A stretch of DNA of 63,946 nucleotides, counting the filler, from Hyphochytrium catenoides (Eukaryota; Protista; Hyphochytriomycota), in NCBI GenBank assembly GCA_900088475.1. It is 8 parts of 8 records of this genome, joined end to end, with 100 filler letters (N's around TTAATTAATTAA, not from the genome) between each part and the next. Parts side by side here need not be neighbours in the genome. Positions count along the whole stretch, not along the records: positions 3,618 to 18,046 come from FLMG01003545.1; 7 more parts are not named here. One strand, 5' to 3'. The first letter of the stretch is position 1. Each line of letters begins with the position of its first letter. The notes beneath the pieces were generated by a model. The model was not told the origin of the DNA, did not search any database, and worked only from the letters and a program-made list of their open reading frames with translations. Of this stretch, positions 7,311 through 14,848 are shown piece by piece. A program made the translations under genes and the position numbers.

Positions 7311-10300
7311 CTACTCCGCTTTGTGCGATGAGGTCTCCTCTGTCTCTTTCCCTTCCATCACTGTCTCAATTCGCTTATTGGGATGGGCCGATGGAGAGTC
7401 AGAAGAGAATGTTCCTCTTCTTAAAAAGACATCCGCAGCGTGTCTTGCTCCCATAGCTGCATCCACAGTGCGACCAAGGGTCTTGTCTTCTCTACTGCCA
7501 CCACTGAATAGCCTTAGGATGTGTGTGGTATCGGTGCGGAAGAGAGAGAGAGAGAGAGAGAGTGAGAGAGAGAGCGTGTGTATGTGTCAGCGGTATCACA
7601 TGGCAGATGGGAGAAAGGTTCACGCTACATTGAAGCAAGAAAAGACCAAAGCAATCAAATGTATTGCTCTAACCTCGTTGATTTCCCCAGTCCAGAGCTC
7701 ATGCGGCGGTAAGAGTCTCTCTCCTCTCTCCTTTGGAACTTGAAGCCCGCATAGAGAATCAGTTTGACTGTCTCAGTAGCGGTCGATCTTCCCAGACACA
7801 CACCAGGGATCCAAGCGATAACAGCGCGATTAGATAGTTGCACAGTGGACAAACATGCACATATTAACAAGGAAAAGCGAAAAGCGAGAAAGAACAAGAG
7901 CTTCTGGTGAGAGATAGTGAGAGCTTTGACAGGAGCCAATGACACCCCTGAGGCAGACTATTTCAATGAGACCAGCCAAGCGATTTCAGGCGTAAGCAAG
8001 TTAGAAGAAGGACAATGACGTCATGTCAAATGAAGGACGGGCAGGGCATGAAAGCGACAAAAAGCATATCTCTCAGACTCTCTCTCTTCATTGTCACCAT
8101 GTACCTGTTCATGGTCTGTTCGGTTGGTGGTAGGAAAGAGTAAGGGACGAGGTAGTTATGCAGCTTCTTCTCATCATCTTGGGTTGGCCCGTACTTCCAG
8201 CCTTGCTCCATGCGTTTGTGCGCCCAGGTCTCATGCGTATTCTGTGCTAACATTTCTACCAGTTCCCGGAGCTGAGGAGGAATGACGACGTCGTCAGTGT
8301 TGACAGGCCGAGGCGTGTACGTCCCCTCTCCCTCTACTGGCTCTCCAAAGTGCCAGATTCGACTGTCAAAGTCGTCCTCTTTCCTGAGGAAATAGCCTGA
8401 CAATACGAGGCGAAGCAAGAATGAGAACGACAACGAAGTTGGTCACGTGAACAAGAAACGGAGAGAGAGAGACAAGCGGAACAGCTTTCTAAGAGAGGTT
8501 CAAGCGGGAGAAGTCAGTGAGAAAGGCCGACGGTGCAATAAATGATAAAGAAGCTAAGCAGAGACCGAACAAGCATAACAGGTTATTACGGAAGCAGCAC
8601 ACTCAGAAGGACTCAAAAGAGAGAGCGATAGAGAGACTGACCTAATGACTGGATGACCTTAAGCGCTTCTATGGAAGTATCTCTATCGTACTGCTTGGTC
8701 TCTTCAGTCAGCAAGTTATAAGGTATAAGATCGGGGTGGAGCTTCCTTTCATTGTCCCTCTGGATGAAGCACATAAAGAGGAGAGAGAGAGCGGGAATGA
8801 GAAAGAGACAAAGTCAACGATCTAGCAGTGGACAGGCGGAGGAAAGTCACCTGCCAAAACAGGTAGGCAGGCGATTGGGGAGAAAGGATGTATGCGGGAG
8901 ACGCGACTTCCCTCAATTAAATCGTGACAGGAAGCTTGAAGATGAAAGCAGCGAGAGAGAGAACAACGCAATCAAAGAGGAGAAGGCCGTGGGCGGACTA
9001 CGCCCACATAAAGCTGAGGGAGAGGAGAAGAGAGAGAGAAAAATGAGAGAAAGATACTCACCTGCTTTCCAAAGCGCCAGCCCTGTGCCACCTTCCCTTG
9101 AGCCCAAACCTCATGCGCGTTTTGAGCCAAGAACTCGGAGAGAAGAATAACGTGAGGAGGCAACTTGATGTCCATTGTGTCCAAAGGCTTTGGCTTGTAC
9201 TTCTCCCAGATTAGCTCTCCCTTATCCATACGAGACAGAGCATCTGGAAAGCGTTCAACCAGATAGACTGCCTCTTCTTGCACCTGCCCAGGGAAGAGAA
9301 AAGCGTAAGCTAAGAAAGAGTAGACTACTTTAGAGACGAGAGTGAGAAACGGCTTGGAGAGGAGGAAGAGAGCAACAACAGACCTTCTCTTCAAGGTTGT
9401 CAATCTTCCACTGTCTTTTGTGCGCTTTCTTCAGGATAAACATTCTAATCTCTCTTATCAGCTCATCAAAGCGGCACATATGAGACGCTCCTCCTCTATC
9501 TGCTCCATTCTCCTTGTCCGTATCCGAGAAGTGCGTCCGCAGAAGGTCTTCGATATCTGCGTCATTTAGGAGTCGTGTCCTCAGCCTTCTCCTACATGCG
9601 AAGGTCCCGCACTGAGAGAACCAAGAGACGGTCTCCCAGAAGTAGGAAGCAATGTAGTAAAAGATCCAGGCCCGAAGAGGAACGATACATTTCTCTCCGC
9701 CCATAAGCGTGGCTTCATGATCCACTTCTACCCGGCATCTCCTGATGTGAGAACCGTCTCCTAGTCCTCGTTGACGGTGCCGGAAGCCTCTCTCCCTCTC
9801 TTCTCCTGGCCACTGCCCGCTCTGCTGATCTCCCAGCACTATAAGGCGGATTCGAAGGAGGTTCCCGTCATCTATAACTATCTCCATATTTCTCCTAAGA
9901 GAAGCGACAATACCAACTGCCTTTTCAGAGAGAGAAAAAACGGGTAGATAGATGGAGTGGACATAGTCTTGAGAAGAGGAGGAGGCACGCAGTCTTCTGC
10001 AAGCGCTGGCAGCATCTTCCTCATCGTTATTGAAGGTGTTGTAGCTCTTCGGCCCTCTTGCTCCGTCCCCGGCCTAAAAGCATCATGTCCACGAGAAGAC
10101 AAGAAGGAAGTTAGACGGGAAAGAAAAGAGAAGGGAGAGAGAGCGAGGTTGACTGAGCAAAGGGAATGAGGGGGCAGAGAGAGAGAGAGAAGGGCAAACC
10201 AGAGAAGAGAGATAAAATGAACAAAAGGGCATACAGATAACATGAAACAACCACCGCCAATGTCCCAGGAAGGAAAGTGAAGGACGAGAGAAGACGACAT

Positions 10301-13300: not shown

Positions 13301-14848
13301 CTAGGATTATAAAGCGTGAACGCTACCTAAGGTAATAGAGCAAAGTTTAGGCGTGAGTGCTTCTGATGAGTCTACTGACGCTTTGCAAAGCGCCGACGAG
13401 TCTCTAATCAGGCTAGCAAAGCACTCCATGCTCATCGCCAATACGGTGCCGCAGGTCTTCCCCTTGTATCTCAACATCCATCGCTCAGAGCAAAGAGGAA
13501 CCCATCAAAGTAATCTGGCCAACTGCTGGAATAACCCTTACCGCAAATATTCTATTCTGTGCCTCCACGTAATCCTCCATCATCTGTGAGACAAGCGCCT
13601 CAGCTGCCGTTCTATTGTCTCTCGGCAAATGTACCACATAGCCTCCCGTGCCATAAGACTTTCCTTGATTAAACTTTGAAGGCGTGAAAGTGAGAGATCC
13701 TAGAAGTTCTGAATATCCGTTCTTCCAGCTGTATATGATGCCATCAGGGCCGTCTGGCTCTCCATATGGCTCTGTGTCTTCCACATTCTTTTCAAAAGCG
13801 GGAAAGCAGACTTCATCTTCAAAAAGCCCAGGGACGTCTTCTGAGCTCGAGTAAGAGGAGCAGGGCTGTCCTCGTACTCGTAGAGTTCGGACCTGTATAT
13901 TCGTCACACGCCGCATGTGGGGCAATGGATTGTCATAAAAACCATTCAATAGTGGGCCCTGAGAAGAGCAGAGAGCTTGGGTCAGCAACTACGGCGGGGC
14001 TACTTGGCATCGAACAATGGTCGACCAGCCTAGCAGACGACTACTGGGGAACAGGTCGTTGTACGATGAAAGTGCCGCAGAAAGGATTAGAAAGCGGTAC
14101 CAGAACACGGTGAAATAGACCTAGTGAGCGACCATCAATGTGAAAGTGGAAGGTCGTTTTGCCAGATTGAAGGAGACAGAGGCTGGCAAGAGATAACGTC
14201 AGCCAGGAGAGATGAGGACAAAGCGCAGAGCTCTTATCGCGGAGCTAGATTACCTGTACCCATTGCCACATCTCCTGATAGGTCATAACGTCATCAAAGT
14301 TCTTTTTAAACGTCATGTTCACAAACTCTTCGTCATAGAAAAGATCGCGCAAGGCCGCGTTTTGCTCATAAGGAAAGTGCACTAGAGAAGGACGGGAAGC
14401 AGAAGAAGGTGTCAAAGGTTTCAATGTCCAGTGGGCGGAAGTTCAGTGGCCACTTCTCTACCTGGTAAGTTCCAGAGGGTGACGTTCAGAGCCATAATAA
14501 ATATAAGATAGCGTATCAGCTCGCGGTAGAATGAGTTTCTCTTAGCCTGCTCATATCGATATAGAGCTTTCTTGAAGTTAAAGCGCATCTGCTGGTATCT
14601 AAGCAACAAATGCGCTGAGTCTAAGCGGTCATGTCGAGGAAAGGAAGGACTTTCATCATGCCTTACCTCTTAACCCTCGAGTGCATTTTCTGCACCTCCA
14701 TGAGCCTATCATCTTCAATTAGCCGGACTGCTGCCTCTCTCTCTCTCTCATTACGACTGCCGATGCCACAGCAGGTAGGGTCCGGATCATACCCGAAGGA
14801 TGACCTCACAGATGACATTCGCTGGTATGGCCTGATCGTTCCTGCCAT
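7311..14848 (-). CDS. polycystin-2 (TRPP)-like cation channel with two C-terminal RyR repeats (PKDRR-type), about 17 exons
   Basis: Spliced GT-AG exons give S1 (ELIRYLIFIMALNVTLW), FDDVMTYQEMWQWVQGPLL, a TOP domain (QVRTLRV..C, YGTGGYVVHL, FTLYNP), SLWNILE, KYLRLNSRLNLLWRTL, pore CFQMLVGAFEYDDL and S6 ILTNMFIAIITEYY. RyR repeats follow: LAQNAHEVWAQGKVAQGWRFG..DNERKLHPDLIPY and LAQNTHETWAHKRMEQGWKYG..DDEKKLHNYLVPY..ATETVKLILYAGF. The stop is at 7655, or at 7311 if one more exon is spliced. Confidence 0.9.

What the first reader, a model, noticed from the sequence alone, without database searches (positions are those of the whole stretch)
7311..14848. Polycystin-type channel fused to tandem ryanodine-receptor repeats in an apparently non-oomycete genome
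Seen: one continuous spliced ORF joins a complete TRPP/PKD2 channel (TOP domain, S1-S6, pore GAFEYD) to two RyR repeats at about 9200-7730. Established: this PKD+RyR architecture (PKDRR) has been described as an oomycete channel family. Inference: this gene has about 16 introns and lies in a microsatellite-rich genome unlike the intron-poor oomycetes I know, so the family may be older and broader among stramenopiles. It would be a candidate Ca2+ channel gated through its RyR repeats.
Basis: partly seen in the sequence, partly recalled or inferred. Interest (0 to 1): 0.75.

Follow-up and report, generated by a model that had tools for sequence, protein, structure and literature searches.

The report
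Polycystin–RyR-repeat channel outside oomycetes
This is an intact 16-exon gene for a polycystin-type cation channel with two ryanodine-receptor repeats in its tail, a family (PKDRR) published as unique to oomycetes, and it lies in what is almost certainly the genome of their sister organism Hyphochytrium catenoides, so the family is older than the oomycetes.

Summary
On the minus strand, from ATG 14848 to the stop at 7655-7657, 16 exons joined by 15 GT-AG introns give one open 1174-codon frame. Scanned exon by exon, Pfam finds Polycystin_dom, PKD_channel (S5 and S6 exons) and two RyR repeats. The whole frame, including the 370-residue linker, is collinear with intronless oomycete PKDRR-A proteins.

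The host is a non-oomycete stramenopile, very probably Hyphochytrium catenoides. The assembly has 4759 contigs, matching the published 4758 scaffolds plus a mitochondrial genome, and the last contig's terminal duplications match the published description. The genome also carries a B-type paralog on contig C4384.

In trees, each copy branches outside all named oomycete members of its subfamily (100/99 support). The channel-repeat fusion and the A/B duplication therefore predate the hyphochytrid-oomycete split.

The same domain order also occurs in glaucophytes and in Diphylleia. Whether that reflects one fusion or several is unresolved.

No RNA data could be obtained, so the splice path rests on homology. 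Nothing supports gating through the RyR repeats. The pore lacks the canonical filter aspartate (VGA instead of LGD).

This is a new member of a known kind, of modest interest.

The parts
14667..14848 (-). Exon 1: start codon (ATG 14848) and cytosolic N-terminus
   Evidence: This is the first ATG after an in-frame stop. The donor is GTAAGG. The junction peptide matches the homologs' ...RY..M motif before S1.
14462..14598 (-). Exon 2: pre-S1 and transmembrane helix S1
   Evidence: tblastn of P0002 residues 60-105 gives 48% identity, E 2e-20.
14254..14381 (-). Exon 3: start of the extracellular TOP/polycystin domain
   Evidence: 63% identity to P0002 residues 106-148.
13542..13958 (-). Exon 4: core of the TOP/polycystin domain
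   Evidence: Pfam Polycystin_dom E 8e-4 on the exon alone. 35-43% identity to P0002 and P0004 over 135-160 residues.
13255..13326 (-). Exon 5: end of the TOP domain
   Evidence: Short matches to P0004 and P0016 plus GT-AG junctions that keep the frame.
12840..13092 (-). Exon 6: S2 and S3
   Evidence: 36% identity to P0002 residues 309-392, E 2e-10.
12394..12580 (-). Exon 7: S3-S4 loop and S4
   Evidence: Matches to P0002 and P0004 at 36-48% identity. The acceptor 12580 was chosen by the length of the homologs' loop.
12009..12150 (-). Exon 8: S4-S5 linker and S5
   Evidence: Pfam PKD_channel E 4e-9, profile 108-161. 59-66% identity to oomycete PKDRR-A.
11788..11874 (-). Exon 9: pore helix and selectivity filter (VGAFEYDD)
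   Evidence: 64-67% identity to PKDRR-A pore segments. The filter column was aligned to the LGD of PKD2/PKD2L1 through the paralog.
11181..11423 (-). Exon 10: S6 and the proximal cytosolic C-terminus
   Evidence: Pfam PKD_channel E 2.6e-6 (profile 184-223) and Ion_trans E 2e-7.
10522..10820 (-). Exon 11: linker part 1, with a conserved ...LIDARYLLEERLRLR... block
   Evidence: 31-54% identity to the post-S6 region of P0002, P0004 and P0021. No Pfam family.
9384..9996 (-). Exon 12: conserved linker domain (model residues 717-920). The acceptor is 9996 or 10005.
   Evidence: E down to 3e-33 against 60+ A-type proteins, with 12 invariant columns in 30 sequences. No Pfam family. The predicted fold has low confidence and no PDB match.
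9062..9283 (-). Exon 13: end of linker and first half of RyR repeat 1
   Evidence: Pfam RyR E 6.5e-14, profile 1-47. 57% identity to P0002 residues 910-981.
8642..8759 (-). Exon 14: second half of RyR repeat 1
   Evidence: Pfam RyR E 5.9e-10, profile 46-89. 75-80% identity to P0002 and P0004.
8105..8396 (-). Exon 15: inter-repeat loop and most of RyR repeat 2
   Evidence: Pfam RyR E 5.8e-26, profile 1-84. 58% identity to P0002 residues 1070-1152.
7655..7787 (-). Exon 16: end of RyR repeat 2, a 23-residue tail and the stop codon (7655-7657)
   Evidence: Matches the last helix of RyR repeat 2 in P0002, P0004 and P0016. The repeat ends at residue 1151 of 1174.

Best explanation
This is the PKDRR-A ortholog of a hyphochytrid, most probably Hyphochytrium catenoides. 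It is a single 1174-residue subunit of a tetrameric TRPP/PKD2-like cation channel. From N to C it has a short cytosolic N-terminus, S1, an extracellular TOP (polycystin) domain, S2-S4, S5-pore-S6, a conserved cytosolic linker of about 370 residues with no known fold, and two tandem RyR repeats 23 residues from the C-terminus. Shown here: the domain content, the open spliced frame, collinearity with intronless oomycete orthologs, placement just outside all named oomycete A-type proteins, and a B-type paralog in the same genome. Inferred: the two repeats fold together into one pseudo-symmetric cytosolic module, as RyR1 repeats 1-2 do, and this module serves regulation or protein docking rather than ligand gating. 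Also inferred: because the A-type filter has Ala where PKD2 and PKD2L1 have the Ca2+-coordinating Asp, the A subunit alone may conduct cations with low Ca2+ preference, or it may work together with the B subunit, which keeps the Asp or Glu.
For: Pfam domains were found exon by exon. The spliced model has 16 exons, all GT-AG introns and no internal stop. tblastn of intronless Saprolegnia parasitica P0002 covers its residues 60-1174 in order across the locus. That includes the linker exons 11 and 12 that bridge S6 to the RyR repeats (E 3.7e-42 for linker plus repeat 1). The model is 47% identical over 1055-1083 alignment columns to the intronless protein P0335. P0002 matches PKD2L1 from S1 to S6 (E 1e-37) and RyR1 repeats 1-2 and 3-4 (E 3e-55) in the PDB. 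In the trees, the A clade has 100% support and the window gene lies outside all named oomycete A proteins at 100/99. The paralog lies outside all B proteins at 100/99. At repeat level, window r1 groups with A-type r1 (98) and r2 with A-type r2 (92). Host evidence is as follows. G000 has 4759 contigs, the last being a 48-kb mitochondrial genome of 30.5% GC. Leonard et al. [quoted passage not shown] The contig's ends are inverted copies of internal segments. One end holds rpl16 and the other's internal copy lies beside atp8, which implies a repeat of about 18.6 kb. The named best hits of cox1 are all stramenopiles at 80-84% identity, with Saprolegnia at 81%.
Against: There is no transcript evidence: no RNA run was listed, so read laying could not be used. 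The exon 11/12 acceptor is ambiguous by 9 nt. Polycystin_dom is below Pfam's cut-off on the exon alone. No tool named the organism, so the identification rests on matching a published assembly description. The function of any PKDRR is untested: heterologous expression of P. infestans PKDRR-B gave no currents (PMC7399828, abstract). The filter lacks the canonical Asp, so 'Ca2+ channel' is not secure.
Confidence: 0.88

Rival explanations
1. There are two adjacent genes: a PKD2-like channel (exons 1-10) and a separate soluble tandem-RyR protein (exons 13-16). On this view the joined frame is an artefact of model building.
For: No RNA evidence could be obtained. Free-standing tandem-RyR proteins do exist among the database hits, for example the 200-500 aa proteins.
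Against: Exons 11 and 12 lie between the two parts. They stay in frame through GT-AG junctions and are homologous to the linker of single-ORF intronless orthologs, at E down to 3e-33 for exon 12 alone. There is no in-frame stop or candidate start between S6 and repeat 1. The B paralog on another contig has the same order.
Confidence: 0.03
2. The host is an oomycete, or the contig is oomycete contamination. The gene would then be an expected PKDRR-A.
For: The closest named relatives are oomycete proteins from Saprolegnia, Aphanomyces, Pythium and Phytophthora. The genome has one A and one B copy, like most oomycetes (PMC7399828, section 2.2).
Against: The gene has 15 introns, whereas the related genes looked up (the A-type P0004, P0335 and P0343, and the B-type P0351) are single ORFs. 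Both copies branch outside all named oomycete sequences at 100/99. Identity to any named oomycete protein is below 50% overall. cox1 is no closer to Saprolegnia (81%) than to ochrophytes (80-84%). The assembly matches the published H. catenoides assembly. The (GA)n-rich, intron-rich context continues into the neighbouring genes.
Confidence: 0.05
3. The gene is a decaying or non-functional copy (pseudogene) that happens to keep an open frame.
For: The filter Asp is replaced by Ala. The end branch in the tree is rather long, at 0.75-0.88.
Against: There are 3525 nt in 16 exons with no stop or frameshift, and every intron is GT-AG. The Ala at the filter is the usual A-type state in oomycetes too. 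All 12 invariant columns of the linker alignment are by definition kept in the window's exon 12, and RyR-domain scores of 150-152 bits equal those of the paralog.
Confidence: 0.03

Closest known systems
Oomycete PKDRR subfamily A (e.g. Saprolegnia parasitica SPRG_03764 / XP_012197723.1 = P0002; also annotated 'RIR-CaC family protein' in Phytophthora)
   Same: Both have the domain order TOP, PKD_channel, conserved linker, then two RyR repeats. They are collinear over about 1100 residues. Both have a tail of more than 10 residues after repeat 2. Both have Gly-Ala at the filter where PKD2 has Gly-Asp.
   Different: The window gene is only 34-75% identical per exon and at most 47% overall. It has 15 introns, whereas the related genes whose contigs were looked up (A-type P0004, P0335, P0343 and B-type P0351) are single ORFs; P0002's own gene structure was not examined. 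It branches outside all named oomycete members. Its filter is VGA rather than LGA. Its host is not an oomycete.
Oomycete PKDRR subfamily B (e.g. Aphanomyces euteiches P0029; P. infestans PKDRR-B of Zheng et al. 2020)
   Same: Same overall architecture. The window genome has its own B-type copy on C4384, 60-65% identical to P0029 in S5-S6 and in repeat 2.
   Different: The window gene is the A paralog. It scores much lower against B channels, and B keeps an acidic filter residue (AGD or AGE) and ends less than 10 residues after repeat 2.
Metazoan TRPP channels PKD2 and PKD2L1 (PDB 5t4d, 5z1w, 6du8)
   Same: Both have six TM helices with a TOP domain between S1 and S2 and the same S5-pore-S6 layout. 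The ortholog P0002 aligns from S1 to S6 at E 1e-37.
   Different: PKD2 and PKD2L1 have no RyR repeats. Their filter is LGD, against VGA here. Pfam found no EF-hand in the tail exons, and coiled-coil segments were not examined. The linker domain here has no counterpart.
Ryanodine receptor repeats 1-2 and 3-4 (RyR1, PDB 5c30, 6uhi, 5gky)
   Same: Each repeat is a full-length PF02026 unit, and the two are in tandem with a short loop. P0002 repeat 1 aligns to RyR1 848-937 at 70 bits.
   Different: None of the other RyR/IP3R parts (MIR, RIH, SPRY, the RyR pore) is present. The channel here is of TRP type, so this is not a ryanodine receptor.
PKD-channel plus tandem-RyR proteins of glaucophytes (Gloeochaete wittrockiana, Cyanophora paradoxa) and Diphylleia rotans
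   Same: Same Pfam order: Polycystin_dom, PKD_channel, then two RyR repeats near the C-terminus.
   Different: They form a separate clade outside A plus B. The exon-by-exon comparison found no match to the linker exons in these proteins. Their repeats do not group with the A or B repeats. Common origin of the fusion is unresolved.

Membership tests
PKDRR (polycystic kidney disease - RyR domain channels; Zheng and Mackrill 2016, Zheng et al. 2020) | A PKD/polycystin cation-channel domain (PF08016) | tested here: met
   The S5 exon scores E 4e-9 (36.6 bits) and the S6 exon E 2.6e-6 (27.5 bits), both above the 22.4-bit cut-off.
PKDRR (polycystic kidney disease - RyR domain channels; Zheng and Mackrill 2016, Zheng et al. 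2020) | Two tandem RyR (R) domains near the C-terminus | tested here: met
   Pfam RyR matches on exons 13, 14 and 15. A local HMM places the repeats at model residues 949-1039 and 1060-1151 of 1174.
PKDRR (polycystic kidney disease - RyR domain channels; Zheng and Mackrill 2016, Zheng et al. 2020) | Channel and R domains lie in one polypeptide | tested here: inconclusive
   The spliced frame is open and collinear with intronless orthologs through the linker. There is no RNA evidence. The joined model was not sent to any database search.
PKDRR (polycystic kidney disease - RyR domain channels; Zheng and Mackrill 2016, Zheng et al. 2020) | Groups phylogenetically with PKDRR A or B | tested here: met
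   It sits inside the A clade (100/100) as a sister to the named oomycete A proteins plus three unnamed ones (100/99).
PKDRR subfamily A | The C-terminus extends more than 10 residues beyond the second R domain (PMC7399828, section 2.2) | tested here: met
   The tail is 23 residues. The C4384 paralog has about 4-6 residues, which fits B.
PKDRR (as published) | Found only in oomycetes | tested here: not met
   The host is a non-oomycete stramenopile, most probably H. catenoides. This is a claim about taxonomic range and not a structural criterion, so it is the claim that fails and not the membership.
PKDRR (as published) | Cell-surface location and multimeric complexes (shown for P. infestans PKDRR-B) | not testable with these tools
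   This needs antibodies or tagging in the organism.
TRPP / PKD2-like channels | Six TM helices with a TOP/polycystin domain between S1 and S2 | tested here: met
   Polycystin_dom scores E 8e-4 on exon 4 alone, below the cut-off. The same region of the collinear ortholog P0002 passes at 37.3 bits, and P0002 aligns to PKD2L1 residues 101-571.
TRPP / PKD2-like channels | Selectivity filter Leu-Gly-Asp | tested here: not met
   The window has Val-Gly-Ala, and the next acidic residue is Glu two positions later. The paralog has Ala-Gly-Asp.
RyR / IP3R superfamily | MIR, RIH and SPRY domains and an RyR/IP3R-type pore | tested here: not met
   No such Pfam hit was found in any open frame of the locus. 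Only the R repeats are shared. True RyR fragments among the hits do show MIR, RIH and SPRY.

The most novel reading that the evidence does not exclude
PKDRR-A and PKDRR-B may be obligate partners of one heteromeric channel. They have been kept as a one-to-one pair since before the hyphochytrid-oomycete split. In that channel mainly the B subunit would supply the acidic filter residue. The tandem RyR repeat would be a portable cytosolic regulatory module that protists have fused repeatedly to different cation channels. Those include PKD-type channels in Pseudofungi, glaucophytes and Diphylleia, and cyclic-nucleotide-binding channels and ankyrin-PKD giants in unnamed organisms.
Probability: 0.15. 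Interest if true: 0.6.

Novelty: new member of a known kind. Interest (0 to 1): 0.4.

Why it matters
Three papers state that PKDRR channels occur only in oomycetes and propose them as oomycete-specific drug targets (PMC4820453, PMC7399828, PMC9694693). A hyphochytrid with both an A and a B ortholog shows that the channel-repeat fusion and the A/B duplication arose before the oomycetes. It gives a free-living, non-pathogenic organism in which to study the family. It also gives an outgroup for asking what changed in the pathogens. [quoted passage not shown] The practical target argument is barely affected, since plants and animals still lack the family.

Tried and rejected
(1) RNA support: the look-up of sequencing runs listed no run, so read laying was never used.

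(3) An exact look-up of the neighbouring RPS26 protein found nothing on record.

(4) The search of G000 with the eukaryotic SSU model returned only the mitochondrial SSU. No nuclear 18S placement was therefore possible.

(5) The ESM Atlas look-alike search with the repeat-2 exon returned only generic RyR-domain clusters.

(6) The 29-aa pore exon alone found nothing in the PDB. The filter was aligned through the paralog's longer open frame instead.

(7) I folded the conserved linker (exon 12) with a 30-sequence alignment. Mean pLDDT was 62.9 and pTM 0.36, and Foldseek against the PDB found nothing below E 0.1 with TM about 0.2. No fold was assigned.

(8) An AU test of 'window plus Saprolegniales as one clade' did not finish in three attempts. 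It was replaced by a smaller careful tree.

(9) I tried to use the genome's RyR-less PKD_channel hits (C1935, C48) as outgroups, to test one fusion against several. They are too divergent: only about 22% identity to the query over S5-S6 for C1935 and no usable match for C48.

(10) An apicomplexan (coccidian) host, my first guess from genome size and GA repeats, was dropped after the cox1 and assembly evidence.

(11) The joined spliced model was built only inside scripts from window coordinates, for local alignment and trees. It was never typed or sent to a database search. All Pfam, PDB and library searches used single exons or stored proteins by reference.
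Full report
WHAT IS THERE. The piece (window 3618-18046 = contig C244:1-14429 of a 61.0-Mb, 4759-contig assembly) carries a multi-exon gene on the minus strand. Stop-to-stop frames were scanned exon by exon against Pfam, by reference.
- Polycystin_dom matched 13488-13988 at E 8e-4, under the cut-off for this fragment alone.
- PKD_channel matched 11856-12281 (E 4e-9) and 11118-11456 (E 2.6e-6).
- RyR (PF02026) matched 8975-9430 (profile 1-47), 8616-8813 (profile 46-89) and 8029-8442 (profile 1-84, E 5.8e-26).

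GENE MODEL. tblastn of four intronless relatives (P0002, P0004, P0021, P0016) laid their residues in order along the locus. I enumerated GT...AG pairs that keep the frame and picked those matching the homologs. This gives 16 exons and 15 introns of 68-525 nt. The frame runs from ATG 14848 to stop 7655-7657, with 1174 codons and no internal stop. One junction is unsure by 9 nt: the acceptor is 9996 or 10005.

Places 7311-7654 lie past the stop. The joined model was made only inside scripts for local alignment and trees, and was never sent to a search tool.

ONE GENE OR TWO. S6 is in exon 10 and RyR repeat 1 starts in exon 13. Exons 11 and 12 lie between them, and both are homologous to the linker of single-ORF orthologs. 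Exon 12 alone hits more than 60 A-type proteins at E down to 3e-33, with 12 invariant columns in a 30-sequence alignment. The model is 47% identical over more than 1050 columns to an intronless protein. A second gene with the same domain order lies on contig C4384. No RNA run was listed, so the splice path is inferred and not observed.

WHOSE GENOME. The last contig, C4759, is 48,127 bp with 30.5% GC. It carries a bacterial-type SSU rRNA, tRNAs and respiratory genes, so it is a mitochondrial genome. Its cox1 finds only stramenopiles among named hits, at 80-84% identity: Nannochloropsis, Heterosigma, Saprolegnia ferax (81%) and brown-alga relatives.

Leonard et al. 2018 (PMC5795050) describe the Hyphochytrium catenoides assembly as follows:
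- 4758 scaffolds plus one mitochondrial genome;
- 3.64 introns per gene, with mean intron length 208 bp;
- a linear mitochondrial assembly ending in rpl16 and atp8, which duplicate internal copies and imply a 19-kb inverted repeat.

G000 has 4758 + 1 contigs. The right end of C4759 (46504-48127, holding rpl16) is an inverted copy of 22644-24269. Its left end (1-254) is an inverted copy of 5690-5946, which lies beside atp8. The implied repeat is about 18.6 kb. I take the host to be H. catenoides with about 0.9 confidence. No tool named it.

FAMILY AND PLACE IN IT. A full HMMER search with the repeat-2 exon and two word searches with oomycete proteins found the same architecture in every named oomycete genus sampled. 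It was also found in several unnamed assemblies.

The window gene is collinear with subfamily A, and its tail of 23 residues after repeat 2 fits the published A criterion (PMC7399828, section 2.2). The C4384 paralog is B-type: it is 60-65% identical to Aphanomyces euteiches P0029 in S5-S6 and repeat 2, and it ends 4-6 residues after repeat 2.

Two trees agree. One has 41 rows with a mixture model and a quick search. The other has 19 rows with LG+G4 and a careful search. In both, the A and B clades are each fully supported. The window gene lies outside all named oomycete A proteins (100/99) and the paralog outside all B proteins (100/99). That is the pattern expected for the sister lineage of the oomycetes. 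It means the fusion and the A/B duplication predate the split. An AU test did not finish.

BEYOND PSEUDOFUNGI. Polycystin_dom + PKD_channel + two RyR repeats also occur in three Gloeochaete wittrockiana transcripts and two Diphylleia rotans transcripts. A Cyanophora paradoxa gene model has PKD_channel + two RyR repeats. These proteins form a separate clade. In the exon-by-exon comparison they showed no match to the linker exons. Their repeats do not group with the A or B repeats in a weakly resolved repeat tree. One fusion or several cannot be decided here, because I had no RyR-less PKD2-type sequences to include.

Tandem RyR repeats are also fused to Ion_trans + cNMP_binding channels and to ankyrin-PKD proteins of about 2,600 aa in unnamed assemblies.

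HOW IT LIKELY WORKS. The ortholog P0002 aligns to PKD2L1 from S1 to S6 (E 1e-37) and to RyR1 repeats 1-2 and 3-4. The protein should therefore form a tetrameric TRP-type cation channel with an outward-facing TOP domain and a large cytosolic tail.

The filter column that is Leu-Gly-Asp in PKD2 and PKD2L1 is Ala-Gly-Asp in the paralog and Val-Gly-Ala in the window gene. Most A-type proteins have Gly-Ala and all B-type proteins have Gly-Asp or Gly-Glu. From my own knowledge, that Asp is the main Ca2+ site of PKD2L1. Ca2+ selectivity of an A homotetramer is therefore doubtful, and A/B co-assembly is a reasonable but untested idea.

In ryanodine receptors the repeats are peripheral modules carrying phosphorylation and docking sites, again from my own knowledge. 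Nothing here shows that they gate the pore. The linker domain has no Pfam family and no fold match.

NOVELTY. The three papers that use the name PKDRR all call the family oomycete-specific. None of the three mentions Hyphochytrium (two were searched for that term directly), and the H. catenoides genome paper does not mention polycystin, ryanodine or calcium. This is a new, earliest-branching named member pair of a known family. It corrects a published range claim but does not define a new kind of system.

Noticed in passing
G000:C4384:57833-63145 (+) = L011:3834-9146: A second PKD_channel plus two-RyR gene in the same genome. It is multi-exon and B-type: 60-65% identical to Aphanomyces euteiches PKDRR-B in S5-S6 and in repeat 2, with filter AGD and an end 4-6 residues after repeat 2. 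Its intron positions mostly differ from those of the window gene. For example, S5-pore and each RyR repeat are uninterrupted here.
   Followed up: yes
P0061, P0171, P0094 (Gloeochaete wittrockiana MMETSP0308); P0054 (Cyanophora paradoxa); P0106, P0128 (Diphylleia rotans): Polycystin-type channels with two C-terminal RyR repeats exist in glaucophytes and in a CRuMs flagellate. This contradicts the published statement that the architecture is absent outside oomycetes. The transcriptome entries could include contaminants, but the Cyanophora one is a genome model.
   Followed up: partly
P0009, P0030, P0032, P0052, P0070, P0072; P0059, P0105 (unnamed Logan assemblies): Tandem RyR repeats are also fused to Ion_trans + Ion_trans_2 + cNMP_binding channels. 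In proteins of about 2,600 aa they occur with ankyrin repeats upstream of a PKD channel. The repeat pair looks like a portable cytosolic module of protist cation channels. The organisms are unknown.
   Followed up: partly
L023 and L025 (ENA ERZ23491423, KOPF15-1 metagenome): One unnamed organism in a metagenome carries intronless A-type (P0335) and B-type (P0351) genes. Both branch between the window genome and the named oomycetes. It may be an early-diverging oomycete or another pseudofungus.
   Followed up: partly
window 15777-16091 (+): An intronless ribosomal protein S26e gene (Pfam E 9e-46). It is transcribed divergently from the channel gene, with 929 bp between the two start codons.
   Followed up: partly
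window 4041-5996 (-): A multi-exon gene for a secreted-looking protein with teneurin/tenascin-type EGF domains. It has a hydrophobic N-terminus at 5996. Its introns are largely (GA)n/(CT)n arrays of up to about 240 bp.
   Followed up: partly
window 17697-17990 (+): The N-terminal FAD/NAD-binding motif of a DAO-type oxidoreductase (Pfam DAO E 2e-10). The gene is cut by the edge of the piece.
   Followed up: no
window 17074-17163: Three exact-looking copies of a 30-bp unit (96% matches). It reads as a repeated ALKKKALAVP peptide on the minus strand. Its meaning is unknown.
   Followed up: no
G000:C4759 (L016-L020): A 48-kb mitochondrial contig of 30.5% GC. Its two ends are inverted copies of internal segments (1-254 vs 5690-5946; 46504-48127 vs 22644-24269), which implies an inverted repeat of about 18.6 kb collapsed in the deposit. 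A metagenome contig (JGI 3300059473) has a cox1 97% identical to this one.
   Followed up: partly
G000:C1935:17028-17438 (L013) and C48:3690-4097 (L014): Two further PKD_channel hits without RyR repeats. The C1935 one has an NGDE pore motif, and from memory of that motif I suspect it is mucolipin (TRPML)-like rather than PKD2-like.
   Followed up: partly
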